NCBI GenBank assembly: GCA_047495785.1
Contig: JBLDXI010000017.1
Span: 2,108,001-2,172,000, forward strand
Reading direction: 5' to 3'
DNA from: Lepidodermella squamata
Taxonomy: Eukaryota > Animalia > Gastrotricha
Length of the DNA stretch: 64,000 nt
Within the stretch, counting starts at the first letter, position 1. Each line of letters starts with the position of its first letter. A program made the translations under genes and the position numbers. Positions 10,643-57,513 of the stretch are shown here, piece after piece. The notes under the pieces were generated by a model. The model saw only the letters and a list, made by a program, of their open reading frames with translations, searched no databases and had not been told where the DNA came from.

Positions 10643-11602
10643 TCAGTGATTGCTTAACGAGACGCCTGTTAGCGGGTCTTCGATTCGGCGCTCGTGAATG
10701 AACTGACCGCGGAGGGCACTTTCTCTTGGCAGGGTGGCGAGACTTGCGATTATTTCTCCGGCTTCATCAGGTGTCTTGTAACCATTAGGATTCGACTCGG
10801 TTTTAACGGCACCAGGCGAGCAAGAATTGATTAGAATACACGAGTTGGGCTTATCCTTCATATCAGCATCGAGGAAGCGTTGAAAAATTCTAGTGATCAT
10901 ATTGACACCGATCTTCGACAGGCCATAGGGCACTATATCGCCATAAAAGTACCCAGCATCGTCGTATAGCTTTGTCAGCCATCCCGCCTTAACGTAGTGA
11001 GTCGGCGGCAAAGCGAGAAATGAATTTATTATAGACGAAACATCGTCAACGGTTCGGCAGCCGCGAATCGCCTCTTGAACAGCGGGCGTAAATTGGTTGA
11101 AAGCGACGTGAGAAAGCGAGCTAGATACATTAACAACACGAGAATCGCTGCTTAGCAACGGTATCAACATTCGGCAGACTTCCAATGTGCCAAAATAATT
11201 CGTATTGATAATCTGCCGGACTGTTTTGAGATCGTAGGGGAAAATTCGCCCAATCGGCGGTTTCACCTCGGAACAGTCTTCATCTGGGTACAGCGTTTGG
11301 TTCTGCTTCGGAAAAATGCCGGCATTATTCACTAGAATATCGATTCGCTTATGATTTTGACGTAGATGAGTATGGAACGATCGGACTGAGTCGAGGGAAG
11401 AGATGTCGAGCTCGTGAAATGACGGTATAACGTCCAAATCTCGGCTGATGCGCTGAGCAGCCTCAGATCCTCGTTCCGGATTTCGGGCGGTCATGTAAAC
11501 TGTCCATGATGGGTTTCGCCTTAGTAGAGCCTTGACTACGGCTAAACCAATACCGCGATTCGAGCCAGTGACTACAGCAACTTTAGCAGCGGCCGAACTC
11601 AT
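10643..11602 (-). CDS. Carbonyl reductase 1-like short-chain dehydrogenase/reductase (intronless)
   Basis: TGSNRGIG, LVNNAG, NTNYFG, VVNVSS, catalytic YGLSK, INSCSPGAVKT. Confidence 0.9.
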   Translation of the reverse strand: MSSAAAKVAVVTGSNRGIGLAVVKALLRRNPSWTVYMTARNPERGSEAAQRISRDLDVIPSFHELDISSLDSVRSFHTHLRQNHKRIDILVNNAGIFPKQNQTLYPDEDCSEVKPPIGRIFPYDLKTVRQIINTNYFGTLEVCRMLIPLLSSDSRVVNVSSSLSHVAFNQFTPAVQEAIRGCRTVDDVSSIINSFLALPPTHYVKAGWLTKLYDDAGYFYGDIVPYGLSKIGVNMITRIFQRFLDADMKDKPNSCILINSCSPGAVKTESNPNGYKTPDEAGEIIASLATLPRESALRGQFIHERRIEDPLTGVSLSNH

Positions 11603-33300: not shown

Positions 33301-35060
33301 TCATAAGTCCATAAGTCCGAGAAGTCATAGATCTTTGAATTCGGTTTTTTGAAAAAAATACCGAAATTAAAACCCTCGAATATTAATTCTGATTAAAATA
33401 AATCAATTTTTTGCTCAGCGGCAAACCTAAGCCGAATTCAAATCCACCGAAATTAAATGTACAGAGCCAAAATCTCCAAAACCGAAAATGTAGATTTACA
33501 GTTTTAGTTATATATCGAATTCAGTTTACAGGTGCAGCAAATGAAAATCAACCTCCAAAGCTTAAACTTCACCTAAATACCTAAACTCTAAAATAATGCT
33601 TAATTTTGGTGATTATCTATTTATTAGGAGCATTACCTATCATCTGATGAAGAAAACTAGACCAATTGGATGAAAACTGAGCATACTGTGGCCTACAGAA
33701 AAAAATTGCAAAATCATCTAAGAATAAGTATTCCTTTTAATTTATAAAATACTATTTTATGATAAGCTTTAATTGTCTCAGATAACGCCATCCCACACGG
33801 TTGCAAAAATCTAGGATTGATTCTTGCATTAATTAGGCGTATCAGATACGAGTTTGCCCGCTTTGTAAGCCACAATATTAAATTATAACCACTCGGTATA
33901 GTAATTACCTTGCAAAGAACGAATAAGAAGTCGGCCGTGTGTTCTTTCAGTTCCATACTCGTACTAGTCAGCAACCGGCACAGCCTGTTGCGAATCGTCG
34001 AGCCTTCCTGCGGCAACCGCCTAACATCAGCCTCGCCAAGCGGCGGCAGGATTTCGTTGCGAACAAACCGCCGGATGAGCCTGTTCGCGCGGCACATGCG
34101 CGCAAACGCAACAAGAATCGGCACCAAATGCTCGTTATCAGCTTGATTGATCAAAACGTAATCCAAATGATCGATAATACGCTTGATAGGCGTCATATCC
34201 TCGTTCTCAACCAAACGCGAGATACTGCTGAACGGTAACAGCGTCATAATCGCAGTTGATTGAAAGAAAATGTCGTGGATTTTCGGCGATTTTACGAGAA
34301 ACAGCCGCCTTAATAAATCGGCAAGAACGTCGAAATTCGGCTTAGCATTCTCGTTCGAAACATCAGCGCTTGACGTGACGTTGAACACGGCTTTCAGCGC
34401 TTCAATGATACATTCGCTGAAAACCAGATCAATTTCCGTATCTTTCACCTCAATTTTCGGCGAAATGAAATTCGAAACAGCTTGAATTGCTTCGAGTTTG
34501 AACGCAACAGCTCGCATTGATTGGTTGAACCCAGTTATTAGAAACAGAATTTTCGAACTGAGCAATGCCAACTGAACGTCGGGATTACTCGATTTCGCCT
34601 CGTCGTTCAGCGTATTGATTAGGGCGGCGACTATGGCGGAGCTCTTGCAGACGGCCTGAACAGCGGGCGAGTTGTAGACGACGTTGCACAGGCACTTCAA
34701 CGCCTCCATGCGGACCGAGCCAATCATTTGAACGTCAGAGTCCAACTTCAGATTCGCCAGCTCTAGGATAAGCCACACGTCGCTGTCATCGCCGAAACTT
34801 TCGTCCAGCGCCAGTTTCTCGCGGCAAAGAGTTCGAATCGATTCAAGGCATAGGAGGACGAGTTTTTCTGAATCAGCCGCCGGCAGAGTCGATTTTTTGT
34901 CTTTGAGTATAGATAATAATTTCGCGAAAATTTCCTTTCTCTGAGGATAGGCGATGCTGGGGAAAGCGAAATTTCTTGCATTTTCGCTGTTCCACTGAGA
35001 TAAAGTCTTCGCTAATTCGTCATCACTGTTGCATTGAAGAATAGACGTCAATTGAACCAT
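30353..35060 (-). CDS. RIC8: Synembryn/RIC-8 G-alpha chaperone-GEF (exons 35060-33909, 30799-30353)
   Basis: EALKCLCN, ILPPL, spliced FLFVLCK|ENVHRLIKYTGFGNAAGLLA, SDTEEY, NPVTG, MTDEQKEYEAMQLVN. Confidence 0.95.
31358..33430. repeat. 101-bp direct repeats (31358-31458, 33330-33430) enclosing a 357-bp inverted repeat (32032-32388 / 32939-33295)
   Basis: Read directly from the sequence. The ORF track independently shows the same peptide on + (32047) and - (33080-33328). Confidence 0.9.
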
Positions 35061-36878
35061 GTTTTATTTCAGAGAAAAAAAATCTAAAACAACAAAAAGA
35101 TGAAATTAACACGCGTCTTTTATCGTCGATTTTCACTAATGCTTTTATACCTCTTTTCCACGCAAAATGAAAAAAAAATTGGAGGAAAAGGCGAACGAAC
35201 GCGACGGACGATTACAATTCATCAATTATTACACAGTGTTCTGTCATCGAATTTGCACACGGTGTTTTATTCGCGACTCGACTCTCAATAATCAAAGGAA
35301 CCATCGATAAAACAGCTCGCGGCACAAAATAATGACGGACTTTATAATAACTGAAATTTCAAGAGGACCAAGCGCGTCTTGAAAACATTGATAAGCTGCA
35401 ACAGAGAAAATGTTCTTGTGGTGTTTCTGTGTTTTAACATCGAGGTGCCATCGAACGGCAAGAATTCAGATGATAAGTAGAGTGAAATAAAGCAACAAGT
35501 GGCAGATATCTTCCGCCCTAATTTCTTCCGAATCGGACGGGAAAAATATACGATTTGTAACGCGAGAAAAACAAACAAAACGAAGATTGGCAGAATTTTG
35601 CGTGTTTAGATTCTAATGCGGATTATGTCGCAGGGAAATGCAATTTCAGACAAAATCATCACTTTTCATCTGAATTTTTGGTAATTACTTAATAACTAGA
35701 ATGCCAAGTGTTCCAGAGACTATTATGTGATTTGGTGGATAGGTAAATATAGCCGCAACACAGGAAGACATAACAAGAGAGAGAGATTCATTACACATAA
35801 TAAAAATCAATAATTTCTTGCAAAAGCACAGAAATTAATTATTAAACAGTAAGTAGTATTATTATTAGTTATGTATATATAACCGGGGATATCAGACGCG
35901 CCTGCTGTATATCGTTTTTCTACTAATAACAATGATCAAACTACGCAATTATTCGCACACTAGAGCTTCTGTTTAAACCTTCCAATACACCAGGCTTTTT
36001 TTCAAGAAAAATCTCCGAATTTTTTCAAATATATCGGAGTTGATTGTTGTAACTTTTCAACGACAAAACAAGTGGTGACTGATTTACAGTTTGCAGCTTA
36101 AAATCTCCTACCATTCGTGAATAGAAAAATTACAGAAAGAAGTATACAAGTCGTGTATAGTTTTTTGTTGTAATCATCAGTTATGTTTTTTTTTACCATA
36201 TTTTCAAAGGTCAGCAATCAATTTCAAATGCAGAAAGATGGCGTAGTAGTATTTCAGTTACTTTTCTACAAGCTACAGTAGTATTGTAGGGTTATCAATC
36301 AGCATTAATAGGCGACATTGGTTTAAATAGCAATAAATGAGCAAGAATAACATAATAATAGTATATAATTATTATTACTTCTCAATGGTGATCCGTCCCG
36401 GACAAAAGTGAATGACTAATTTCTGCTGCGCAAAACCGCTTGACACGAACGACGCGAATAAATAGAAAATTACAATCCTCTCATATCAGTGCGATATTTT
36501 TAATACGTTGGTTGCTGCGCAAGGTCAATGAAAAAATAGATAGGTAGGCCGGAGAAAAGAATGTCGATGAAACGGTGTACTTTACATAGGATGTGACGAG
36601 CCATAAAAGTGCATCTTCTTCCAGTTGACTGAAACAACAAAAGATCGTAGGATTTAGAATTTTTTTTACCCAATTGCTACCTACAATAGTAATGTAATAA
36701 TAATTACGCGTGACAAGAAATTAACGAGGTTCGTTCTTTGCTTTTGTACAAGTGAAAATGACTCGAAAAGCTAATTATTTACTTCGGACTTGGATGGATA
36801 GAAAAAAGAGGCTTGTTGCAAGCGCTTCAAACGAGAGATATAAATAAAGTTTGTGATTAAAGGCTCGGCTATCGACTA

Positions 36879-37780
36879 CTACAGAACAAGAAGAGTGTTC
36901 AGATCTTCCACAACCCTGTTCAACGTGTGGCGGATTCGGCTGACGAACCGCGTGGTCGCTAGGGTCTTAAATAGACCGATGGTGAGCTTGTACATCCAAA
37001 ACAGGTTAAGCGAGTCGAGAATGACGCAGGAGAAAAGCATCACGCAGAAGCCCGCCGTAGGAATGGCGTCGTAATTCATGTAGATGTGGTACCAGAAGTA
37101 GGGCATGGTAACGATGCGGCACAGGAAGAACGATAGCACCAGAAGGAGCCCGTTCAGCATGTAGAATTTGGTATCTTTCGACGCTGTGAGGTGCATGTGC
37201 CACCGATTGTTCACGAATACTGTCGACCATTCTGCTGTGAGACGTACGCACGCGAACCAGATGAGAAAATTATATTCCTGTATCCAATTAAGTATGGGTT
37301 AGTCAATAACGTAGGCGTTAAGTAAACAAAACGAACTGTGGCGACGTAATATGAAGCAATCGCGGCGATGTGGTGGAAGAAAAAAATCATGTCCGCGGAA
37401 TATGAAAACATGATCGCCATATCTATTCAAACAAAACAATTAAGAATACCGGGATATTACGCCTAAATAACAAACATACCGACGATCATATAGCTTAGGG
37501 TGAAAGCGAGGATAGCCCTTCCCATGATTGTGTAGTTCCAAACTGGATCAAGCTGCATGTGCGTATCAGTGACTAGCACTCCAGTTGAAATGACTGAGGC
37601 AACGATGGCGTGAAACGATGATACGACTCTCTCGTTCCATTCCACTTGATCTCGTTTCGATAGCTTGTTATAGCGACGGAACCATTTGCTCGAGAAATGA
37701 GGACTTACGTACCGATACACTGCCGTGAAGATGACAGAGCTGAGAATAACAACAGCTAGGTTGTGTAAAGAGTAGACCAT
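36879..37780 (-). CDS. TLC-domain protein (TLCD4/TMEM56-like), about 3 exons
   Basis: EWNERVVSSFHAIV, FFFHHIAA, STVFVNNRW, LNGLLLVLSFFLCRI, LDSLNLFWMYKL. Confidence 0.85.
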
Positions 37781-38022
37781 GGTCTCGCGATATTTGCGTA
37801 AAAGACTTTGTCCTCAATAACTATTTAAGAGAAATTAAACATCTAAAATAAAACATGAGCACAACGGTTACTTAATAAGCTCCTTTACTACAATTAACAC
37901 GTTACACGTTGGCTGAAAATAATACACGTGAAAGGAGTTTATCAGCTTCAATCAAAGCTTAACGGTCAAAAATCATCACGGGCTATAAAAAAAGTAGCAC
38001 TATTTTCAGGTTAGAAATAGTT

Positions 38023-38493
38023 TCATGCTTTAGCAGCATCCTGCTTTTGCTCTGATGATTTGTCTTCGTTTTTAGAACGCCAATCGTTTAATGCTGCTTT
38101 GATGGCATCCTCTGCAAGCATCGAGCAATGCAGCTTGACTGGTGGTAGGCAAAGTTCTTTTGCAATATCAGTATTCTTGATGGTAGATGCTTCGTGCACA
38201 GATTTGCCTTTGACCCATTCAGTCGCAATAGAGCTAGAGGCAATAGCAGAACCGCAGCCAAATGTTTTGAATTTAGCGTCAACGATCTTGCCATTGTCAT
38301 CGACCATAATTTGCAGCTTCATAACATCGCCACAAGCAGGGGCGCCAACTAGCCCAGTGCCGACGTTTTTGGCTTTCCGATCAAGAGCGCCGACATTCCT
38401 GGGATTTTCATAGTGATCGAGTACTTTTTCATGATAGAAGCGACATCTCACAGCGAGAGATGCACTGCGGTTCAGTAGCTTTCGGGCTAACAT
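38023..38493 (-). CDS. ISCU: Mitochondrial Fe-S cluster scaffold IscU
   Basis: Presequence followed by YHEKVLDHYENPRNVG, GAPACGDVM, FGCGSAIASS, LPPVKLHCSMLAEDAI. Confidence 0.98.
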   Translation of the reverse strand: MLARKLLNRSASLAVRCRFYHEKVLDHYENPRNVGALDRKAKNVGTGLVGAPACGDVMKLQIMVDDNGKIVDAKFKTFGCGSAIASSSIATEWVKGKSVHEASTIKNTDIAKELCLPPVKLHCSMLAEDAIKAALNDWRSKNEDKSSEQKQDAAKA

Positions 38494-39683
38494 TTTTCAA
38501 ATAGTCTAACATAAAACAGCAAAAAAGGATTAATGAACAAAATCAGCAAAAAGTTCATACTATTTCACGGAAAAACTCAAGTTTCGAATGTAACGCTTAC
38601 TACCAGAGCACAACGTTAAACGTCTTTAAAGTCAAGGACCGAGGAACCAGCATGAAAGTGATTAGATTAAATAAATGAACAGTACTTGAAATTCAAATAT
38701 ATCGGTAATATGTAATGAAAATGAAAGCTATGATTTGAAGCAAGCAGGATGATGGATGATGTGAATGAGGGTTTGCATTAAAAATGCATTTAACCAACTG
38801 CTTTTCAACTGCTTTGCACTAATGCAAGCTATTTATTTATTTATTTAAGAGCCATTCATCCGATTTTAGAAAAAGTTGGAAAGCTCAGCTGATGCCAGCT
38901 AAGAAATAGCCTGCAGCATTTCAACTTGTATGGCATCGCCAATAAAATTAGTAGCTGGCATCATTCGAAGAAGCTGCCTATAACGCTCTTCAATGCTGTG
39001 AGACTCAGTATCAAGCAAAATATGTTGATGATCGGAGACAATGAGAAGCCTAAACAATGGAAAAATTGATGTAATGATCGCCAAGAAATGTCAGCCAGGA
39101 GCAACATGTGTATGGCGTGGAAATGGAACCGAAGAAAGCACATTTCGTTGTGGTTCGACGATTACTAAGCATGACGCATGACGTCGCCTTAGCCCCACAC
39201 TGCTGCACTGCTGACTGACAAAACACAAAACGCAAAGACCCGAGAACCTGAAAAAGAAGACTTTTGGGGCCAAAAACTTCCAGAAATCGTTGTTAGGAAA
39301 TATTATTGATTATTTTATAGCTACAATTTTTACTTTTTAAAATAATTATAAAGAAAAATATGTGAAGTCGAAAATACAGATAAATATTAACCGCGCGATT
39401 TCTTTGGCTTTCGGTCAGAGCCTCGGATCCGCAAAGCCTCGGGCGATATGCCGGCGAAGATGAGCATGAACCGTGAACGCATCGTATGCGACAGTGACAG
39501 CAGCTCGCTCAAGCTCTAGTACATGCCAGTTTACGGTTTAAGAGTAGTGAAACTTCGGAAGCCTCGTTTTATCGCCTCGTTTAATTCATGATGCACTATT
39601 TCTGCTGAAAGGCCATGAAAACAAAATGTCATGGATTTTACTGAAATTCTCTTCTTCTCTTTACCGTTTTAGCAGTATTTAAA

Positions 39684-41912
39684 ATGGCCAAGCGCAAAGC
39701 GAAATCTTCTAGCGTGGTAGACTCAGATTCAGATGAATCAGATGTCGATTTCGATTCAGATGAAGATAGCGACGGTGGTTCCTCTTCTCCTCAGGTTTTT
39801 ATCGATTGGTGGATATGAGCGATTAAACTTGAAAAATTCACTATCTTGTAGCGTTCGCAGCCGAAAAGAAGTCGGCCATCGAAAGCAAAAAGCGACTCAG
39901 ATGAAGTTTCGGGCGGCTCTTCCAGTGAGGATGATTCTGACGAAGAAGTTGGTATCTCCGTTTTTTAATGTTTCTCCTGCTTTACTTGGTATCTACTGTT
40001 TTAGTGGACCGCGTCCAAGAAAAAAGGCGGCGAGAAAAAGAAAAGTAGCCCGAAAAAACCGGCTGCAAAGGCCTTTAAGGGTAATTATTACACTTGCTAA
40101 CGCCTCAGCAGCACCATATTACCTTATTTTTGTCTAGCCCCAGCAAGATTGTCTAGCAGCGAAAGCGAATCCAGCGAGAGCGACGCTTCACCAGACGGTG
40201 GAGACTCGGACGAAGAGCCGGATGAAGAATCACTCATTGCGGACGAAGAGGATCGTAAATGGCTGATGAACTTGACCGAAAAAGAGCGTGAGCAGGAACT
40301 TTATAACCGCATTGAAAAGAAGCGGGCAGAAAAGAAACGCAAAGAAATTGAGAAAAAGCTGAAAAAGATTCAGAAAAGCAAAGGTCAAGGTTCCGGTACT
40401 GAATTTGGCAGTCCATCAACGTTATCCGCCTTGGAGATCTCTCGTGCCAAAGAGCGCCGCGATGCTCTCGAGAAGAAAGGCGAAAAGAAGCAGGGTGCGT
40501 TGAAAGCCCTCATGGCAAAACGTGAAGAGAAGAAAATTAAGGAAGAAAAACGTCGCCAATCGGCTCCCGTCCGCGTCGAGGATGTCTTCGGCGATTCATC
40601 AAGTGACGATGACGATGTGAAGAAAGATCCAGCGGAGCGTGCTGTCAAAGCCGCTGGTGTTAAAATGCGACACGATGAGGTTCGCAGCAGCGATTCATCA
40701 AGTGAAGACGGCGAAATTCGTAGCTCGAAAAGAAGCGAACCGATCAAAGCGAAGGAAGACCTTCATCGTATTAAGCTATCCCGTGATCGTATCGCTCGGT
40801 GGTGTTACATGCCATTCTTTAAAGACATCGTTGTCGGTTGTTACGTTAGAATCGGCATCGGCAATAGTCCCGAAACTCAACAGCCAGTCTATCGTGTCAC
40901 TCAAATCGTTGACGTAGTTGAAACTGCAAAAACCTATAACGTCACTTGTGCCAATGCCAAGTTGAACACTCGAACTAATAAAGGTCTCTTATTAAGGTAA
41001 TATTTTAAATTTAGTATTAAGTTTTAAGTTCTCAAGTGATTTTTTAGACATGGGAAAGCCGAGCGTGTTTACAGGTTCGAATTCATCTCAAATCAGCCTT
41101 TCACCGACTCGGAATTTAACAAGTGGAAAGAAGCTATGCAGCAAGCGGGTGTATCCCTACCGACGGTGGATGAAATAGACCGAAAGGTCAAAGCTATCGA
41201 AGAAGCTGGTCGCTATTCTTTGAAGGAGGAAGATATCGAACTAATGGTGCAAGAAAAGCAAAGAGTTCGGAGAATGCCGTTCAACTACGCGACTCGGAAG
41301 CAGGAATTGTTGGCCGACAAAGAATCAGCTGAACATGCCGGTAATTATGCCAAGGTGCAAAAACTCGAGGAAGAAATCGAAGAGCTGGAAATGCGTGCTC
41401 GCGAGCTGCACAACAACCGATCGCAAATTCAGAATTCAATTGCACTGATCAACCAGCGAAACCGCGAGGAGAATCTGAACAAAATGGAAGACATTTTGAA
41501 CATGGAAGAGTCAGCGCGAGACAAGGCAGTTAGCGATCCGTTCACGCGACGTGCCACTCGACCTGGTATCCAAAAAGTAATTCCAAGATCTACCTTAAAA
41601 GTGACATTTTTCACAATTGTTCGTATTTTTCAGACGAAAGAAGGCGAAGGCGCTCCGAATTCTGCTCAAAAATCCGATTCTAAGCCGGGCATGCCGGCTC
41701 CTATAAGCGCTGCTGGCATCTACGAGGCTCTTGATTTGGACCTGAACGTATCCATACCAGCCCTAGCAACAACGACCCCTTCCGCAATTGCCGTGCCCGG
41801 TAAAGCGTCTGGTTCAGGCGCGGGTGACCCAGGCAGTGCTAGCAAACCCGGTACGTCGAATCGCCGGTCTCTCAATCTGGAGGCGTACAAAGCACAGAAA
41901 GGACTAATTTGA
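39684..41912 (+). CDS. RTF1: PAF1 complex subunit RTF1 (multi-exon)
   Basis: [23 protein letters not shown]; Plus3 domain ([28 protein letters not shown]); DPFTRR; [16 protein letters not shown]. Confidence 0.95.
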
Positions 41913-42721
41913 CCGTGCTCATTTATTCGACATCGCCAACTTTCACACCGCCCGCGACTGATCGCAATTTTACTCCGCGATTTACTGTCAAGGGCATTTT
42001 GTTATAAAAAAACTCGAATTTCAAGCCCTACTGTGTTGTTTACGTTGTTAGGCAAGGCTTTTGTAGATATATTTGCCGAGTTCGATTAAGTAAAAATGCC
42101 GGAAAGCAGCGACACAAGGTGTTGTATGGACCTATCAGGTTGATTATTATTGGCTTCGGAAGTACGAAACACGAAAAACTATATATTGCCGATGTATTTC
42201 ACTCAGATCGTTTCTTTTTAACGTTACGCAATGAAAAATGAAAATAAACCGGGTGAATGTTTCTGAGGAAATTTTCATTTGTTCGTTAATTATCGAAACT
42301 GACTTATTTAATCGAGTAAGGCTGTTGTTCTTTCTTTAAAAGGTGAAAACTTGCTGGAGAAGCCCGTTCACAACAACATCCAATGATCGGTGATTTGAAG
42401 GCTTGACAGAAATAGCGAACCTCGCTGGGTTTTTTTTACGACAAATAAATGAACTGGCGGCAAAGCTGAGGTTGGAAGGTATTCATTATAAGATACTACG
42501 ATACTTTTCAAGTAGTGTTTTATTATTGGCCAAATTCCGAATTCAGCCGGTCATTTAAAAAGCTATTTCGGAAGTCTATTATGGTCGCTATAAAAATTGA
42601 AATTTCAGGCCGATTTCCGAATAGGAGCTGCTAAATTCCGTTTCAATATAAGTACCAATTATTGTAATTTATTTGAAAAAAAAATGAGAGCGAAAGTAAA
42701 GACACTGTTGCAACAACTTGT

Positions 42722-42737
42722 GGCCCTGAAAAGGGCC
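42722..42737 (-). promoter_or_regulatory. Histone 3' stem-loop (H3 copy 1)
   Basis: GGCCCTTTTCAGGGCC on the - strand. Confidence 0.95.
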
Positions 42738-42769
42738 GGTCGGTTTTTATGTGCCTGAAGACGTGTTGT

Positions 42770-43225
<456 letters not shown>

Positions 43226-43414
43226 TTAGCGAATTGAACCGACAGTGTAATCGAGATTACGCCGCGGAATTTAAAGCCCTACTATAGGTGTCATGTTGTG
43301 AGCGCGTGCTCATTCATAACAGACCAATCCGGCTCGTGTCGCAATCAGGGCGTGACAATATGGCGCTTGAATGGCGGGAAAGGACGCCATAAATACCCCG
43401 GCGATGTGTAGTGA

Positions 43415-43783
<369 letters not shown>

Positions 43784-43843
43784 GCACCCGTGGTGGATTT
43801 GATGCCATAGCTCGTTAACGCCTATTTGATCAGCCTACTAACC

Positions 43844-43859
43844 GGCTCTTTTCAGAGCC
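43844..43859 (+). promoter_or_regulatory. Histone 3' stem-loop (H4 copy 1)
   Basis: GGCTCTTTTCAGAGCC. Confidence 0.95.
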
Positions 43860-44573
43860 ACAAGTTGTTGCAACAGTGTTCACAAGAATGCAAAGTTGGT
43901 TGAACAGATTCATATTCATATTTTCCACTGAGAGGAAATGCTGAAAAAAATAAAAGTGGCGCGTGCTGTTGATTGTTGATTTCCGTTAACCTCGCAAATT
44001 TTAGATAACGCCTCGGGGATCCGCCCATCCGGGATCCGCCCATAAAAATCTAACTGCCGAGTCGCGCGTGCGGCTGATCTAAAATTTCAATGAGAAAAAT
44101 CACCGCAATCACTTATGTGCGACATCGCCATACCAAAACTATAAAAGACTCTTGCAAAAAATAATAAACTATCATCTGTATAGTAAAACTAGTTAAATTT
44201 AAATCTGCCATGTCTATAGGCAAACTGTTACCTATTATCTGACGCACCACCGTTTTATCAATAAACTAATAAAGTGGATAAAAAAGTATATTCAATCAGA
44301 AGCGAAATTAGCCTGCATTCAAACAAAATTTGCCGCGTTATCGCATGAATAAGAAATAAGGCTCCATTGTCTTGGATTATAAATCTGCTTGTATCCACCT
44401 TATTTGAGTCATTTTTGCTCTTTATTATTTCCCGCTGATAGTTGATAGGCTTAACTATTACCATGTTCGTGTGTATATATCACAGATTTTACGATTTAAC
44501 CTGACGAACGTGGCAGTTGACGCTTTTTCAGTTTATATGTAAAACATAACTAAGTCGACAAAAAAGGCATTTC

Positions 44574-49967: not shown

Positions 49968-50146
49968 TTTCGCTATTTCATTTTGATAAAAAAATTTAAA
50001 TTGTGTATTATTTGTAAATTCGACAGTTGATCCCGCCTAATACAACAGCGGAAAATTTCGTACAGCGGAGAATTGTCCAAGTGGCAATTAAAAATGAGAC
50101 ATAAATGAGAATAAACAATTGATGAAACACTGTTGCAACAACTTGT

Positions 50147-50162
50147 GGCCCTGAAAAGGGCC
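50147..50162 (-). promoter_or_regulatory. Histone 3' stem-loop (H3 copy 2)
   Basis: GGCCCTTTTCAGGGCC on the - strand. Confidence 0.95.
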
Positions 50163-50194
50163 GGTCGGTTTTTATGTGCCTGAAGACGTGTTGT

Positions 50195-50704
<510 letters not shown>

Positions 50705-50837
50705 CTACTATAGGTGTCATGTTGTGAGCGCGTGCTCATTCATAACAGATCTATCCGGCTCGTGTCGCAATCAGGGCGTGACAATATGGCGCTTGAATGG
50801 CGGGAAAGTGCGCCATAAATACCCCGGCGTTGTCTAG

Positions 50838-51212
<375 letters not shown>

Positions 51213-51272
51213 GCACACGTGGTGGATTTGATGCCATAGCTCGTCATCGCCTGTTTGATCAGCCTACTAACC

Positions 51273-51288
51273 GGCTCTTTTCAGAGCC
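51273..51288 (+). promoter_or_regulatory. Histone 3' stem-loop (H4 copy 2)
   Basis: GGCTCTTTTCAGAGCC. Confidence 0.95.
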
Positions 51289-51601
51289 ACAAGTTGTTGC
51301 AACAGTGTTCAAAAGCGGTTGAATGTTTCAAGTTTTAATAAAAGCGTTGAATTTTTACTTTTCGAAACATTTCGAAACGATATTGCGATGTGTTACCTCA
51401 TGCATGCTGTAGGATGTAAATACATGCTTAGCTCGCTTATTTCCAGGTAGGTTTTATCATCTCATCAATGGTCAGTATTATTTGGACCCTTATTAGTATT
51501 TTTTGCACTAAAATGATAACATGTGGCGCTGATAGCACGTGTTTTCTACTCGTCGTATCACGCGATAAAAAGTCTTCATTAAAATTTGCTTTTGAACTCA
51601 A

Positions 51602-52865
51602 ATGATATGTAAATTAGCAATAGGCCTCATTGGGCCTGGTTTGGTCGGCAGCGAGCTTGCAAATCAATTGGCATTAGCTTCAGCGAAAGGCTTAAATTCC
51701 GCAGGTGAACTCGTTATAAAATTATCTACTTCTGGATTTATAATTGGGGTTTTTCAGGCCAACTGCAGTTGCAAATCGCGGCAATATGCAACTCGAAACG
51801 CATGTTTCTGATCGACGATGACGAAGCGCATCGAAAATTCGGCGAAAAAGTCGGAATTACTGCGGCTCACGGCAAATCTGAGCTATTTCGTAATTTTCTA
51901 TTAGAGCATGGTTCTGAACTTGACCTCAATTCATTCACCCGCCATCTTACCTCTTGCGGAGCTGTCGCATCTTGCATCGTCGATTGCAGCTCAGATGACG
52001 CATTGGCGTCTCTGTACCCGGCCTGGCTTCGGGCTGGTATTAACATTGCCACGCCGAATAAGCGAGCCTTCTCTAACTCAATGAGCCTGTATCGCGAAAT
52101 CGCAACAGCTCAGCTCGAACGAAAAGTTTACTGCTATCACGAGGCGACTGTCGGCGCGGCTTTACCAGTTGTAGACACCCTGCGAAATCTCCTAATCGCA
52201 ACTGGGGATGAAATAATCAAAATCGAGGGTGTTTTATCGGGAACTATGTCATTCCTATTTAACACATTCTCGCTGAAACCTGGCGACGTTTCGCCACTTG
52301 GAGAAGCGAAGAAATTTTCGGAAATTGTCAAAATTGCGAAATGTAATGGCTACACTGAGCCGGATCCTCGCGAAGACCTTAACGGTATTGACATTGCCCG
52401 AAAAGCTGTTATATTAGGCCGAATCAGCGGACTCGATTTAGATTTGGCTTCATTGCCGGTTGAAAATGTTGTCCCTGAACCTCTACGGCTTATTCAAAAT
52501 GTCGACGAATTCATGGCCAAACTTGCAGATTTCGACGAGCACTTCGATAAATTGAACGCTGAAGCTAGAGCTAAAAACAAAGTTCTTCGCTATGTTTGCC
52601 AAGTCGATCCTAATGGCTCATCATCGGTGTCACTCAAAGAGTAAGTTCAATATGAATTATTCTAAAAATATTCGAAATTTGTTTGTGGAGGTTTGATGTC
52701 GGTCACCCATTCGCTTCGTTGAAAGGGGCTGATAACATGGTTGTTTTCACCACCCGACGCTACGAAAGCAGTCCTCTGGTCATTCAAGGTGCTGGTGCTG
52801 GGGCTTCGCTAACTGCCTCAGCTGTATTAGCCGATATTTTGAAAATTGCTCGCCATTTCGCTTGA
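51602..52865 (+). CDS. Monofunctional homoserine dehydrogenase, fungal Hom6-like (exons 51602-51704, 51758-52640, 52691-52865)
   Basis: GPGLVG Rossmann motif, IATPNK, HEATVGAALP, EGVLSGT, GYTEPDPREDLNGIDIARK, HPFASLKGADN, QGAGAGA..TASAVLAD. AATAAA directly after the stop codon. Confidence 0.92.
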
Positions 52866-53373
52866 ATAAAAAATGTAAAATGCGGAAGTTACTATATAAC
52901 CGGATTCAAGCTAAACTTGACCCATTTTCCACTACGCGTCACGCAAATTATTCACAACCGGTTACTTAGTCACGCTTTGGGATTGCAGTGCGGCGGCTAT
53001 GTGTGAGTAATCTTTTTTCGGCTCTGCCTACTCTGTTAAACAAAAACCGCTGCAGATAACAGCAGCCTCATCAAGGTGATACACATATACGTGGCAGACA
53101 TCATTTTTACCAATAAAAACTAGGCATCTTGCTGTATATCGCAGCGGCGAGAAGAACATTACTGCTTATCTTTGTTTCCGTGCCATTGTGTCGGCCCCCG
53201 CGCAAAACCCGTTTAGGACCGATAAAAAAGCCAGGAATACGATATGAGACCTAAAATGTATGCCTGAAAAATAATATAATAACAATAGGTCGAATGACCT
53301 TCTTCCTATAATGGAAAATCTTCATTTCTAAGGAAATTAATTAATCCTCCTTAAATAGTCGATTAATTTAAAA

Positions 53374-54913
53374 ATGCTTCCATATCGAGCCAGCGGGTTA
53401 GTGCACTACTATGACCCTATGGAGGCGTCGCAGGAAGATTTTTTCAAGTGCATCATTTGCTTCCGGCATTTGGAGGCCGAGCATAACAGGGCGTGTCAGC
53501 ATTGCAGCAAATGGTATCATGCTAAATGTATCGAAATCTGGGTTCGGCGAAACCGAAATTGCCCCCACTGCCGCATCGAATCAGGAATGGAGAGATTCCC
53601 TATAATTAAGTAAGCGTTTTCCCAATTTGGAAGAGCAATCAGATGGATAAATGATTGAAATTTCAGCCTGGAACAAGGCCTCGGGCCCGCGCCAATGTCC
53701 ATGGCAACGACGCGCAATATATCTCGCGAAAGTAGCCGATCTGACCTGAGTAAGGAGGAGCTTTACGCAACCGTTGTCTCTCACTCACCATCAACATCAC
53801 CATCTTCAAATAACAACTCGCTAAATAGCACCTCTGAACCATGGTCATTACAACGGCGGGGTCATTTCGTTCAAGTCTCACATCGCTGGATTGTCGCTTT
53901 ATTGGCGCGGCCTAATTACACCCTAGCAGTGTCGCGGGATGGAAATTGCACGGTAATAAAAAATTTTTTATTAAAAATAACACTAAAAACTAAATTCAAT
54001 AAAATTTGAGGAAATAAAAAAAATTGTTGGAAATTTTTAATAGGCTGTTTCGAAGAAATCGACTTTCCTGTGGTCGACTGATATCGAAATCGTTGGTGGC
54101 GCTTTCACCTACGTTTGGCACGCGGCCGTCGATGAAAAAAGAGGCCGGGTTCTTTTCAACTTCCACAATGTTCTCGACGTATTCTGCCGGTCTGCCGTTA
54201 ACGTGTACTACGTCGAAATTTCGGCTCTCGAAGAGACCAACGTTAGCCGGTCGATAAAGGCTAAGACTAAACCGTTGTTAACCCACCGCCAGTGGTGCTG
54301 CTTCGGCCTCAGAATCGACCCATTACATGATCTGCTATTCTGCACAGATTGGTACAGTGCGAAGATCGGCATTTGGAGCTTGGCTGAGGTGAATAATAAC
54401 TCGAACGCTGAGCCGAAACACATCATTACCCGGCCGCATGAATTGAACAGCTTCAGCCCGACGCGATGTGCGCTTTTCAGGCCGAGCCCATCCTTACCTC
54501 ACGTCGTTTCTCTCGCGATTTCTGATTGGCGATATGATGCGATTTATTTATTTAAAGTCATTGTTCAAGGCGAAATTTCTAGTCATTACGAGGCTACTCT
54601 GGCGACGAAAGGCTCGCGACCCGGCCGAGTTCGCGGCCCGGTCGATTTGCATTTCGACCCAAGTGGCACGCTGATAGTTGGCGATCAGCAGAACAAACGC
54701 GTTCAGGTATTCATTGCCAACCCTGAACTGCCGCTTTTCGATGTTAAAGTCAGTGAACAAGTCAAGACGCTGTTTTCAGCCATCGCCATTACCGAAGAAT
54801 TGATGTTCGACTCGTCGGCGTCGTTAACGGGGAATTCGATGGCGATCCAGGCGAAGCACATCATGGTCGGATTAAACAATGGCGAGGTTCACTATTTCAA
54901 AGTTGGGCAATAA
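53374..54913 (+). CDS. RING finger plus NHL-like beta-propeller protein (3 exons)
   Basis: RING CIIC..CQHCSKWYHAKC..W..CPHCR. NHL repeat KGSRPGRVRGPVDLHFDPSGTLIVGDQQNKRVQVF. Introns ~53610-53666 and ~53953-54042 join the frames. Confidence 0.7.
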
Positions 54914-55147
54914 CATCGATTTTTTTTAACAATTCATTTACCTGATACATTGCCTATTTTGATAAAATATTAAAATTTTAATTTGAAATTGTGGTCGCAA
55001 TAAATGTTCGCATTTTAGCTACATTTTTCATGAGAACCATTTTATTGCAAACTTATCAATTAAATTATGCTAACTCAGCAGAAATTATACGTATAGAATT
55101 TTTCAAAAAATCGAAATTAAAAAATGCGTTTAGGATTCGACTAGTCC

Positions 55148-56541
55148 TTAGTAGAGATGCCCTCCTCGTAAGGCTTTGTCATCTTCGTCCTGTTTCTTTT
55201 GCTGAGATCCAGCAATTGTAGCCGGTTGCCATTGCTCTTTCTCCTTCAACCGCTCTTCCGCAGCCGCTTTTCGATTTTTGCAAATCACAACAATGGGTAC
55301 AACAAATAAAAACACCTGAAAAAAGAAAAATTAAGAAATCAGAAGCCGGAAATTGATTCGTCATTTTACCAGAATTAGGATAATGGCAATTCCTGGTCCG
55401 ACCATATACCATAAATACTGATTGAACTTGGCCCAAAATTGAGACATGCATCCCTGGAATAAATCGGGATTTTCAGTTTAAAATTTGTGAATTTCAATTT
55501 TTAATACCGTTTTGTAATTTGTCGTTGAATCAATAGTGTAAAACACGCATTGTGCCATGAGTTGCGAGCTTTTCATCGAGGCGCTGTTCGAAGCCGAGGG
55601 GTAGGCTGCTTTGTAAATTTTCGAAGCATTTCCAAGGTAAGCCGAAGTACAGCAACTCGGGGGAATCTTCATCTTTAGGGTCGTTAAATAATTAGTCGGA
55701 TCCTGCATCGTTATCCAACTTTTATTAAACGCTGTGATTAGGAAAAAATTAGGATAATAATCAGGATAATTTAGGTAAAAGCTTACAATTCGCCTGATCG
55801 TAGTCGCCTCCGCCAGTTACGCCGCAGCACTGGAGACCGATCTGGCCAATGTTCCACAGAATATTAGTGGCTTCCAGTGAATCAACAGCCACGTAATTCG
55901 TGATAAGAGTTTGATAAAAATAACTCGATAAAGTTGTGCCAATCTGAAAAATTCAGGAATCTTAAGGCAGATCAAAATTTAATTCCTCTCCTTACCATGT
56001 TCTGCGCGTTTGCGATAACAACAACCAGCACTATGCAAACGATTAGCATAATCCCGATCACGAAATCATACTAATCGGAAGTATAATATGGGACAATTTT
56101 AAGAATGGAAAATCATGAAAAAACCGCATTTCTTACCACTATGACGAACATCACAGAAGTCGCTTTTCCTCGACCGCAAAATGCCATGCAGGTTAGGACG
56201 GAAAGGACGCAAAATACGGATCCAATAATGGAGCAAGCGATCGAAGGTCCTGTTAAATAACTCCCAATATTGGTCGAAGTGTCCTGAAATTTATCGAATC
56301 CATGAAGACGCTATACCATAAGAAAGTCTAACATACCGATGGAATCGGTAGAACTTCAAGTTGGGGCTGAATCGCTGGTCTAAGGACTGCATCGAATAGC
56401 CCTAATAACGTCCCGATCGCGAATAAGGCAAGACCGAGTATCTGTAATTCACGTATTAAATTGATTTCCTAATTGAAATTGCTGGGAGCTTACGCCTAGC
56501 GGTATGTTAAAACCGATGAAACAGCATATAGCGAATGACAT
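55148..56541 (-). CDS. Tetraspanin (about 8 short exons; largely missed by the ORF track)
   Basis: Spliced product MSFAICCFIGFNIPLG|ILGLALFAIG.. with four TMs. Large extracellular loop WNIGQIGLQCCGV..DY, IPPSCC, GC. Confidence 0.85.
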
Positions 56542-57513
56542 TTTGAAATCTCAATTCGTTCGAAGTAAGGTGACAGATTCAGGCTTGGCAATTGTAATGT
56601 ATTGTCACCATCATCATTTGTTGCGCACCGAGTAATGAAGTATTCGCACTTTTTTGTACGAAAACAATGTATTGCGATCGATTTATTAAGGTGAGCCGAC
56701 GGTTTGTTATATTGTTGCTACAACTGCGCAGTAATTTCATCGATCGAGCCTGGTAACCTCACTTTTACAATCGATTTACCATTTCATTGGGATTCGCACT
56801 TATTTCATCTCCAAACTGTGGTGATGAGCCATGTCTTTCATGGGATCATTTTATTGAATTGAAGTTGAAGATAAAGAATTAAAAAAAAACGGTTTTCAGG
56901 TTTTATATGACCGCATTTTTATCAGATTATAACCGCCTTTACTGTGATAAAGCGGCGTCGGAATAGCATTGGGGCTCTTACTAGTGGTTATTTCTGCACA
57001 ATCCCCCTCAATTTATACTTTGTTATCTTCACACTCACTATGAAAATAGGGCATGCTCGAATGTAGTCGAACCTCCTTGATCAAGTAAGATTCCTCTCGC
57101 CAATAATTATTATGATAATCATAAACAGTTTTGAGAGTATTACTATACGAGTGATCGCTTGGTTATTTGATCGATTTTAGGAATTGCGAGACTCTTCAAA
57201 ACTCTGCGGCGTATAATATTACTAGGGGTTTATTAGCTCATTGATTCCACCAATATAAAAAAATGAGATTCGCCGTCCATCGATCAAACTGCGGATGCGA
57301 ATGATATGGGCATATAATGGTAAAATAGGTCATGCACGAATCGGCGAAGGTGATGTTGCATGACGCTAAAAGAAGCATCCATTGCTAATATTTGTTAGTA
57401 TCTATGGTTATATCAAGGCTTTGAAAACAGGATGGGATTTCTGTTTATTTGCTTCAGAAATTTTAAGTTGACCCATTTATTTAGGTGGAAAATATTATTT
57501 TTATTCGGATAAA

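What the first reader, a model, noticed from the sequence alone, without database searches (positions are those of the whole stretch)
51602..52865. Homoserine dehydrogenase in an animal genome: candidate domesticated horizontal transfer
Seen in sequence: a complete, motif-intact, monofunctional HSD with two host-style ~50-nt introns and AATAAA. It sits ~400 bp from a metazoan stem-loop H4 gene on a contig with RIC8 and RTF1, so simple contamination is unlikely. Established knowledge: animals generally lack the aspartate pathway to Thr/Met/Ile. The C-terminal half closely follows yeast Hom6 as recalled (FS..VK.AK..GYTEPDPR.DLNG.D.ARK..I.GRISG; HPFASLKG.DN; VIQGAGAGA..TA..VL.D..KIA). Inference: transfer from a fungus or protist, or rare retention, possibly restoring part of essential amino-acid synthesis.
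Basis: partly seen in the sequence, partly recalled or inferred. Interest (0 to 1): 0.8.

Follow-up and report, generated by a model that had tools for sequence, protein, structure and literature searches.

The report
Fungal-type homoserine dehydrogenase gene in a gastrotrich
A small invertebrate, probably the gastrotrich Lepidodermella squamata, carries an intact, expressed and selectively maintained gene for homoserine dehydrogenase, an amino-acid-synthesis enzyme that published comparisons say animals lost; a distant relative has it at the same chromosomal spot, so it is a long-standing part of this animal lineage and not contamination.

Summary
Window 51602-52865 (+) holds a three-exon gene for a 386-aa monofunctional, yeast-Hom6-type homoserine dehydrogenase (HSD). 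It has Pfam PF03447+PF00742 and matches PDB 1EBF at E=6e-59. It keeps 86 of 95 family-conserved columns and the recalled catalytic residues.

A cDNA-derived contig from a 2015 run matches exons 2-3 exactly, with intron 2 removed. An independent DNA run covers the gene at the neighbours' depth and bridges it to the next gene. Eleven of 12 listed allelic differences are synonymous.

The host is an animal: Ric8 hits bilaterians only, and the histone genes carry stem-loops. Assembly statistics fit Lepidodermella squamata.

A relative known only from metagenomes has the orthologue (47% identity). It shares the intron 2 position and the same downstream RING-finger gene (51% identity).

No named animal appeared among the best hits of two large searches. 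The nearest sequences are ichthyosporeans and early-diverging fungi, at about 50% identity.

Trees place the animal pair deep in the opisthokont HSD family, and AU tests cannot tell a holozoan side from a fungal side. Intron 2 sits at exactly the position and phase found in chytrid, Mucor and Glomeromycota genes.

My best reading is an old horizontal transfer from an opisthokont microbe. Vertical retention is not excluded. The rest of the pathway could not be searched. The scan holds no other note on this enzyme.

The parts
51602..51704 (+). HSD exon 1 (34 codons + 1 nt), encoding the N-terminal GxGxxG nucleotide-binding start
   Evidence: Sequence and translation. It aligns to the N-terminus of the relative's intron-less 5' part. 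No listed RNA contig covers it.
51705..51757 (+). Intron 1: 53 nt, GT..AG, phase 1 in codon 35, 30% GC
   Evidence: Frame-preserving splice. The three allelic indels in X1 near here (51721, 51737, 51740) all lie inside it. The RNA contig starts exactly at its acceptor. The relative L010 has no intron here.
51758..52640 (+). HSD exon 2: end of the NAD-binding domain and most of the catalytic domain, including the PNK, GYTEPDPR and DIARK motifs
   Evidence: Pfam PF03447 and PF00742. PDB 1EBF at E=6e-59. X2 cDNA contig with 0 mismatches. Eleven of 12 allelic differences are synonymous.
52641..52690 (+). Intron 2: 50 nt, GT..AG, phase 2 in codon 329, five codons before the H of the HPFAS motif
   Evidence: Spliced out in the X2 contig (joint 52640>52691). 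The same position, phase and length occur in the relative L010. The same position and phase occur in Borealophlyctis, Mucor and Funneliformis and in metagenome loci L015, L056 and L058.
52691..52865 (+). HSD exon 3: C-terminal part of the catalytic domain; stop TGA at 52863-52865
   Evidence: Pfam PF00742 positions 129-173. The X2 contig covers it to 52855.
52865..52870 (+). AATAAA hexamer overlapping the last base of the stop codon; candidate poly(A) signal
   Evidence: Read from the sequence. Its use is not shown, because the RNA contig ends at 52855.
50901..51312 (+). Histone H4 gene (CDS 50901-51212) with a 3' stem-loop (51268-51312), 390 bp upstream of the HSD start
   Evidence: Translation and Pfam. 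Rfam RF00032, 31 bits, E=1.3e-6. The X1 depth bin covering 51215-51411, just 3' of the H4 CDS and including the stem-loop, is about 8000 against about 100 elsewhere, so the unit is multicopy.
50122..50605 (-). Histone H3 gene (CDS 50195-50605) with a 3' stem-loop (50122-50167), divergent from H4
   Evidence: Pfam Histone at E=5e-48. Rfam RF00032, 31.3 bits. A second near-identical H3-H4 pair lies at 42702-43860.
53374..54913 (+). Downstream neighbour: a RING-finger protein gene of three exons (about 53374-53609, 53667-53951, 54043-54913; 463 aa). It is the syntenic anchor shared with the relative.
   Evidence: Pfam zf-RING_2. Both introns are seen as joints in the X2 contig. It is 51% identical over its full length to the gene directly downstream of HSD in L010 (E=1e-167). 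X1 DNA contig 52561-53623 bridges HSD to it.

Best explanation
This is a functional nuclear gene of an animal, most probably the gastrotrich Lepidodermella squamata. It encodes a cytosolic, monofunctional homoserine dehydrogenase of the yeast Hom6 type. The enzyme uses NAD(P)H to reduce L-aspartate-4-semialdehyde to L-homoserine, or runs the reverse reaction.

Shown here: the gene is intact, is physically part of the animal chromosome, is transcribed and spliced at intron 2, is under purifying selection, and has been kept at the same locus since before the split from a relative about 50% diverged at the protein level.

Inferred: enzymatic activity, from conserved residues. Also inferred is the origin. 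An ancestor of these animals acquired the gene as genomic DNA from an opisthokont microbe, either an early-diverging fungus or a holozoan protist. One donor intron came with it. The gene then took on host codon usage, and the window's lineage later gained intron 1, or the relative lost it.

Inferred and untested: it works with other aspartate-pathway enzymes, whether host-encoded, also acquired or microbial, to make or salvage homoserine for threonine or methionine.
For: Family and intactness:
- Pfam PF03447+PF00742.
- Yeast Hom6 structures 1EBF and 1Q7G at E=6e-59.
- 86 of 95 columns that are at least 90% conserved in 51 non-animal opisthokont HSDs are kept. These include the GxGxxG start, the PNK lysine, and the E, D and K of GYTEPDPR..D.ARK.

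Genomic reality:
- X1 DNA depth on the gene is 64-132 against 58-100 on the neighbours.
- An X1 contig spans 52561-53623 into the RING gene, and two haplotypes are visible.
- GC3 is 0.43 and RSCU correlation with the neighbours is 0.70, the same as for the neighbours themselves.

Expression:
- An X2 contig with SMART cDNA adapter letters has intron 2 removed and 0 mismatches.

Selection:
- 11 of 12 listed allelic differences are synonymous, binomial p=1e-6.
- In the relative, 5 differences are synonymous and 4 are not.

Age:
- The orthologue in L010/L064 is 47% identical, has a 50-nt intron at the same site, and has the orthologous RING gene directly downstream.
- It is sister to the window protein at 99/98 support.

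Animal host:
- Ric8 hits only bilaterians, at about 30% identity.
- PP2C_C, RTF1 and histone stem-loops are present.
- Assembly statistics match PMC11660948.

Foreign-looking distribution:
- No named animal is among the best 120 of either word search or among the 20 representatives I named.
- The nearest sequences are Sphaeroforma, Chromosphaera, Syssomonas, Ichthyophonus and early fungi.
- From one search's E-values I calculate an alien-index lower bound of about 57.
- Richter et al. 2018 (PMC6040629) state that gene families in the threonine and methionine pathways were lost entirely from animals.

Eukaryotic DNA-level origin:
- The intron 2 position and phase are shared with three fungal phyla.
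Against: - The donor is not identified. The animal pair sits in an unresolved basal polytomy.
- AU tests reject none of pair+holozoans (p=0.40), pair+all fungi (p=0.55), pair+Dikarya (p=0.50) or pair+non-Dikarya fungi (p=0.13). A position beside the holozoans is what vertical descent predicts.
- Host-like composition and a deep, donor-less branch are equally expected for a native gene.
- Absence from other animals rests on ranked lists capped at 120-150 hits and on the literature, not on an exhaustive survey.
- Activity is not measured. One column that is invariant in the 51 reference sequences is changed in the window (PNKK to PNKR).
- The exon 1-exon 2 junction was not seen in RNA.
- No partner enzyme of the pathway was found, because none could be searched for. 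Among the scan's 5479 notes on this genome, the words homoserine, aspartokinase and semialdehyde matched no note open to the look-up (reports overlapping mine are withheld).
Confidence: 0.58

Rival explanations
1. Vertical retention. The gene descends directly from the opisthokont ancestor and survives only in this animal lineage, having been lost independently in every other sampled animal group.
For: - The pair is not nested in any fungal or holozoan crown clade.
- Without the long-branched relative, a 96/91 branch that I read as separating the fungi from the window, the holozoans and the outgroup is recovered. The drawing was off, so its membership was inferred from its size.
- Two quick LG+G4 trees place the window next to the holozoans.
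- The AU test does not reject animals+holozoans (p=0.40).
- The intron shared with three fungal phyla could be an ancestral opisthokont intron.
- Codon use is fully host-like.
Against: - By my count on the accepted animal tree, it needs roughly ten or more independent losses, against one gain.
- Richter et al. report these families as lost entirely from animals.
- No choanoflagellate or filasterean HSD is among the closest hits, although EukProt entries from ichthyosporeans and Syssomonas are.
- The one holozoan gene structure available, Sphaeroforma with 8 introns, shares neither animal intron.
- First-stage notes list many other transfer candidates in this genome (unchecked).
Confidence: 0.22
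2. The gene is real, but the protein no longer works as a homoserine dehydrogenase in amino-acid synthesis. It may have been recruited to another substrate or role, or it may salvage dietary or bacterial homoserine with no de novo pathway present.
For: - No partner enzyme is known in this genome (weak).
- Animals in general lack the pathway.
- There is a lineage-specific 9-residue loop in the window, the PNKK>PNKR change, and several changes at otherwise conserved columns in the relative.
Against: - About 90% of family-conserved columns and all recalled catalytic residues are kept in both species after long divergence.
- Selection is purifying.
- A changed function usually shows changes at substrate-binding positions, and none was seen.
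Confidence: 0.15
3. Contamination or assembly chimera. The gene belongs to a fungus or protist associated with the animal and was joined to animal DNA by the assembler or by amplification chimeras.
For: - The likely source assembly was made from multiple-displacement-amplified DNA, which produces chimeric reads.
- The gene's left neighbour is a multicopy histone unit where contigs branch.
Against: - An independent DNA run bridges the gene to the animal RING gene on the right at equal depth and shows two haplotypes.
- The same HSD-RING arrangement occurs in two metagenome contigs of a relative, together with GATA, GalNAc-transferase, Memo and RPSA genes.
- Introns are of host size, and codon use is host-like.
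Confidence: 0.02

Closest known systems
Saccharomyces cerevisiae Hom6 homoserine dehydrogenase (PDB 1EBF, 1EBU, 1TVE, 1Q7G)
   Same: Both are monofunctional with a two-domain layout. The match is E=6e-59 over residues 54-289 of exon 2. The PNK lysine and the E, D and K of GYTEPDPR..D.ARK are conserved; these correspond to K117, E208, D219 and K223 as I recall from DeLaBarre et al. 2000, and I checked the numbering against the alignment offset.
   Different: The window gene is encoded in an animal. Its protein has a 9-residue longer loop after the FNTFS motif, has PNKR instead of PNKK, and is 27 residues longer overall. In the trees the Dikarya form their own clade without the animal pair.
HSDs of unicellular holozoans: Sphaeroforma arctica SARC_10188, Ichthyophonus, Chromosphaera (Nk52), Syssomonas (Colp12)
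   Same: These are the highest identities found, 47-53%. They lie beside the animal pair in all trees.
   Different: No supported sister relation was found. Sphaeroforma's 8 introns include neither animal intron: its nearest ones are 4 nt and 11 codons away.
HSD genes of early-diverging fungi (Borealophlyctis, Mucor, Funneliformis)
   Same: They share the family, have about the same identity (47-54%), and have an intron at exactly the same codon and phase as window intron 2.
   Different: The animal pair lies outside the clade of 35 non-Dikarya fungal and allied sequences (support 93/92). Forcing the pair in costs 7.9 lnL (p=0.13). The other fungal introns are not shared.
Horizontally acquired metabolic genes of microscopic invertebrates such as bdelloid rotifers, tardigrades and nematodes (recalled from the literature, not re-read here)
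   Same: A foreign-type enzyme sits among animal genes, has spliceosomal introns and host codon use, and is transcribed.
   Different: The donor side here is eukaryotic and an intron came along with the gene. The acquisition is old enough to be shared by species about 50% diverged in protein sequence. I found no paper that reports this enzyme in an animal.

Membership tests
Homoserine dehydrogenase, monofunctional Hom6 type | NAD-binding domain (PF03447) followed by catalytic domain (PF00742), with no aspartokinase or ACT domain | tested here: met
   Both Pfam families are above their cut-offs and nothing else is found. Only 390 bp of ORF-free DNA separates the gene from H4 upstream.
Homoserine dehydrogenase, monofunctional Hom6 type | N-terminal GxGxxG dinucleotide-binding motif | tested here: met
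   G11, G13 and G16 in exon 1 are conserved, as in 51 reference sequences and in the relative. Exon 1 itself was not seen in RNA.
Homoserine dehydrogenase, monofunctional Hom6 type | Catalytic and substrate residues (yeast K117, E208, D219, K223; the residue roles are recalled from the literature) | tested here: met
   K136, E235, D246 and K250 are kept in the window and in L010.
Homoserine dehydrogenase, monofunctional Hom6 type | Significant sequence similarity to solved Hom6 structures and placement inside the opisthokont HSD clade | tested here: met
   1EBF at E=6e-59. The pair lies inside the opisthokont group; eight of the nine bacterial and plant AK-HSD rows form a 100/99 clade of their own, and the split at the root is weak at 44/41.
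Homoserine dehydrogenase, monofunctional Hom6 type | Enzymatic activity on aspartate semialdehyde or homoserine | not testable with these tools
   This needs an enzyme assay or yeast hom6 complementation.
Horizontally transferred gene domesticated in an animal | Physical linkage to undoubted host genes, in data independent of the assembly | tested here: met
   X1 contig 52561-53623 bridges HSD to the RING gene, and depth equals that of the neighbours. The same arrangement occurs in L010 and L064.
Horizontally transferred gene domesticated in an animal | Transcription and correct splicing | tested here: met
   The X2 cDNA contig has intron 2 removed. Intron 1 is unverified.
Horizontally transferred gene domesticated in an animal | Absence from other animals | tested here: inconclusive
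   No named animal appears in the best 120 of two searches or among the 20 named representatives. Published work says the pathway families were lost entirely from animals.
Horizontally transferred gene domesticated in an animal | Supported nesting inside a donor clade | tested here: not met
   The pair sits in a basal polytomy, and all four AU constraints give p>0.05.
Aspartate-family amino-acid biosynthesis pathway in this animal | Presence of aspartate kinase, aspartate-semialdehyde dehydrogenase, homoserine kinase and threonine synthase (or Met2/Met17) | not testable with these tools
   Only this window can be read. Among the scan's notes on the genome open to the look-up, none mentions these enzymes, which proves nothing.

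The most novel reading that the evidence does not exclude
This gastrotrich lineage has a working route from aspartate, or from bacterial homoserine, to threonine and/or methionine, built from retained or acquired opisthokont-type genes. At least one 'essential' amino acid would then not be essential for an animal. A second novel reading is that the gene is the only known vertical survivor in animals of the ancestral opisthokont pathway.
Probability: 0.15. Interest if true: 0.85.

Novelty: new member of a known kind. Interest (0 to 1): 0.6.

Why it matters
Loss of the pathways for nine amino acids is treated as a defining event at the origin of animals (PMC6040629, PMC12923814). A conserved, expressed homoserine dehydrogenase in a free-living, bacteria-feeding animal is an exception that can be tested directly.

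If partner enzymes exist, an animal lineage has regained or kept threonine or methionine synthesis. If they do not, a lone enzyme kept by selection points to salvage of microbial homoserine or to metabolic sharing with microbes.

The intron shared with fungi is also a clean marker that the gene entered, or was inherited, as eukaryotic genomic DNA. Few reported transfers into animals have such a marker. Finally, the gene gives a concrete character for dating gene gain within Gastrotricha, a phylum with almost no genomic study.

Tried and rejected
1. Contamination or chimera: rejected.
2. The assembly statistics fit Lepidodermella squamata instead.
3. Blastocladiomycota as donor: an LG+G4 quick tree pulled the long-branched relative towards Blastocladiella, Sorochytrium and unnamed long branches. 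Under the mixture model the animal pair stays together (97) and stays outside that group, so I treat the first result as long-branch attraction.
4. Introns shared with Sphaeroforma: not found. Intron 1 is 4 nt off, and Sphaeroforma's last intron is 11 codons off.
5. More orthologues: the JGI metagenome scan gave 46 loci, all at 51% identity or less and none with the animal features. The contigs of the relative that hold Ric8 do not reach an HSD.
6. Rfam at gathering scores and a tRNA scan of the window found nothing. The histone stem-loops appear only at the E-value threshold.
7. Literature: I found no paper that links this enzyme with an animal genome. A search for the catalytic-residue numbering found nothing, and metagenome sample codes were not found in any paper.
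8. The protein atlas added nothing beyond the family name.
9. I kept the histone coding regions out of read laying, as a precaution because they might resemble human DNA.

Full report
**What is in the sequence**

I rebuilt the gene from the window.
- Exon 1: 51602-51704.
- Intron 1: 51705-51757, 53 nt, GT..AG.
- Exon 2: 51758-52640.
- Intron 2: 52641-52690, 50 nt, GT..AG.
- Exon 3: 52691-52865.

This gives 386 codons and a TGA stop. AATAAA overlaps the last base of the stop codon. Pfam places NAD_binding_3 and Homoserine_dh on exon 2 and the end of Homoserine_dh on exon 3. It finds no kinase or ACT domain. The best solved structures are yeast Hom6 (1EBF, 1Q7G) at E=6e-59.

In an alignment with 51 non-animal opisthokont enzymes, 95 columns are at least 90% conserved. 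The window protein keeps 86 of them. These include the GxGxxG start, the PNK lysine, and the E, D and K of GYTEPDPR..D.ARK. As I recall from the Hom6 structure paper, those last residues are the substrate and catalytic residues. One column that is invariant in those 51 sequences differs (PNKK to PNKR). The observation therefore stands in all its parts.

**Is it really part of this genome, and is it used?**

Two public runs hold the stretch, and I laid them on 51215-57100.

X1 is a DNA run from 2024.
- It covers the gene at depth 64-132, against 58-100 for the genes to its right.
- It shows two haplotypes a few percent apart.
- It has one contig running from 52561 to 53623, that is from HSD exon 2 into the next gene.

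X2 is a run from 2015 whose loose ends carry the SMART cDNA primer, so it is cDNA.
- It has a 1072-nt contig that matches 51758-52640 joined to 52691-52855 without a single mismatch. Intron 2 is therefore removed exactly as predicted.
- It also shows introns of 52-91 nt in the neighbouring genes on both strands.

Of the 12 allelic differences listed inside exon 2, 11 are synonymous, where about 24% would be expected by chance (p=1e-6). GC3 (0.43) and codon preference (RSCU correlation 0.70 with the pooled neighbours) cannot be told apart from those of the neighbours.

One gap remains. No listed RNA contig covers exon 1, and the X2 contig begins exactly at the exon 2 acceptor with adapter letters in front of it. 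That supports 51758 as a used acceptor but does not show what is joined to it. Earlier notes of this scan report spliced-leader trans-splicing in this animal, so a trans-spliced form is possible. Three points speak for exon 1. The relative's gene encodes the same N-terminus in one uninterrupted ORF. The three allelic indels near here all fall inside intron 1. The nucleotide-binding motif is intact.

**Who is the host?**

- The 447-aa Ric8 ORF of the window finds only animals. Apart from one unnamed metagenome protein at 51%, its named hits are bilaterians (crinoid, hemichordates, molluscs, arthropods) at about 30% identity, with no rotifer or nematode near the top.
- RTF1, a PP2C with the animal-type C-terminal domain, and H3/H4 genes with Rfam histone stem-loops lie on the same window.
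- The window has 42.8% GC. The scan holds notes on 148 pieces of a genome of about 121 Mb.
- The published Lepidodermella squamata assembly is 122 Mb in 157 contigs with 43% GC (PMC11660948).
- An earlier agent reached the same name from spliced-leader genes.

I take the host to be this gastrotrich or a very close relative. This rests on matching statistics, not on a marker gene.

**A second animal with the same gene at the same place**

The exhaustive profile-free search of 1.84 billion representatives found nothing closer than about 50% identity. One hit, P0200, ends exactly where exon 2 ends. Its contigs are L010 and, from another sample, L064. From left to right they carry the following:
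- a GATA factor;
- the HSD body;
- a 50-nt GT..AG intron in the same codon and phase as window intron 2;
- the last HSD exon;
- directly downstream, a RING-finger gene;
- further along, a GalNAc-transferase with a ricin lectin domain, Memo and RPSA.

The RING protein is 51% identical over its full length to the window's downstream gene (E=1e-167). The HSD is 47% identical and is sister to the window protein at 99/98 support.

One of the samples holding this contig also holds a contig with Ric8 (51% identical to the window's) next to RTF1, as in the window. The gene was therefore already at this locus in the common ancestor of two species that differ by about half of their residues in each of three proteins.

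**Where does the gene come from?**

In two word-based searches of 5.8 billion proteins, the nearest named sequences were unicellular holozoans (Sphaeroforma, Ichthyophonus, Chromosphaera, Syssomonas) and early-diverging fungi, at 47-54% identity. No named animal was among the best 120. Twenty representatives that I named were fungi, a plant, or unnamed. From the E-values, the alien index is at least about 57.

A 62-sequence maximum-likelihood tree under a site-heterogeneous model gives the following:
- Bacterial and plant aspartokinase-HSD fusions fall outside.
- The animal pair emerges from an unresolved base together with the holozoan groups, the Dikarya and a 35-row clade of other fungi (93/92) that excludes the pair.

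AU tests reject none of four constraints:

| Constraint | lnL change | p-AU |
|---|---|---|
| Pair with holozoans | 0.98 lower | 0.40 |
| Pair with all fungi | 1.03 higher | 0.55 |
| Pair with Dikarya | 0.13 lower | 0.50 |
| Pair with non-Dikarya fungi | 7.9 lower | 0.13 |

Without the long-branched relative, a 96/91 branch appears to separate the fungi from the window, the holozoans and the outgroup. I inferred its membership from its size, because the drawing was switched off. A grouping of the relative with Blastocladiomycota appeared under the simpler model and disappeared under the mixture model.

**The intron character**

I mapped four annotated genes onto their DNA.
- The chytrid Borealophlyctis, Mucor and the glomeromycete Funneliformis each have a phase-2 intron in the codon five residues before the histidine of the HPFAS motif. 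This is exactly where the window and its relative have theirs.
- Three metagenome loci show the same intron.
- Sphaeroforma has eight introns and none at that site.
- Window intron 1 has no exact counterpart anywhere I looked.

So intron 2 was not gained in the host. It was inherited with the gene. This rules out a bacterial source or a cDNA-mediated route. It fits a fungal-type donor, or an intron that is ancestral to opisthokonts.

**Weighing transfer against retention**

Both readings fit the tree and the intron. Retention needs the gene to have been lost in every other sampled animal lineage, roughly ten or more times by my count on the accepted animal tree. It also runs against the published finding that these pathway families were lost entirely from animals (PMC6040629). 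First-stage notes list many other transfer candidates in this genome (unchecked).

On that basis I put an old transfer from an opisthokont microbe at about 0.6-0.7 of the origin question and retention at about 0.2. The overall confidence of 0.58 also includes the inferred activity.

**Function**

The sequence says that this is an active NAD(P)-dependent homoserine dehydrogenase. Among the scan's notes on this genome that the look-up could reach, none mentions aspartokinase, semialdehyde dehydrogenase or homoserine. That is no evidence of absence. A complete or partial pathway, salvage of bacterial homoserine, and a changed role all remain open.

**Verdict**

This is a real and, as far as I could find, unreported case: a conserved, expressed, Hom6-type enzyme of an 'animal-lost' pathway in a gastrotrich lineage. 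It is a new member of known kinds, both as an enzyme family and as foreign-type metabolic genes in small invertebrates. Its physiological meaning is unknown.

Noticed in passing
window 42702-43860 and 50127-51312: There are two near-identical copies of a divergent H3-H4 pair, with 0 and 1 nt differences in the coding parts. They lie 7.43 kb apart and flank the ankyrin-repeat protease gene. X1 depth in the bin just 3' of the H4 coding region, which includes the stem-loop, is about 8000 against about 100 elsewhere, so the unit is present in many copies genome-wide, and X1 contigs branch there.
   Followed up: partly
window 51758: The only RNA-derived contig over the HSD gene starts exactly at the exon 2 acceptor. 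It is preceded by the reverse complement of the SMART cDNA primer, not by exon 1 or a leader. A similar adapter junction follows the H4 mRNA end at 51308. The library structure that produces this is not explained.
   Followed up: partly
L061, L062, L063, L015, L056, L058 versus window 52641-52690: A phase-2 intron five codons before the HPFAS motif is shared by HSD genes of Chytridiomycota, Mucoromycota and Glomeromycota, by several metagenome loci, and by the two animal genes. It is absent from Sphaeroforma. It may be a useful marker for the history of this gene family.
   Followed up: yes
L001-L003 and window 33714-41000: The Ric8 and RTF1 (Plus-3) genes are neighbours both in the window and in metagenome contigs of the relative. 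Microsynteny is therefore kept at about 50% protein identity.
   Followed up: partly
window 6378-7481 (+) and 10643-11602 (-): There are two long single-exon ORFs, in a genome where the spliced genes seen in the RNA contigs carry 50-90 nt introns. One is an arginase-family protein of 367 aa and the other a short-chain dehydrogenase of 319 aa. Their origin was not examined.
   Followed up: no
L004 (Logan SRR29021630 contig, 4.7 kb): The closest single representative to the window protein is P0014. It is an intron-less HSD next to an intron-less CDC73 gene in an unnamed compact eukaryote, and it groups with the Sphaeroforma clade. It may be an unsampled holozoan.
   Followed up: partly
protein P0241: Among the deep fungal HSDs is that of Sorochytrium milnesiophthora, a blastocladiomycete whose species name points to the tardigrade Milnesium as host. 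Fungal parasites of microscopic animals are a plausible kind of donor. The animal pair does not group with it under the better model.
   Followed up: partly
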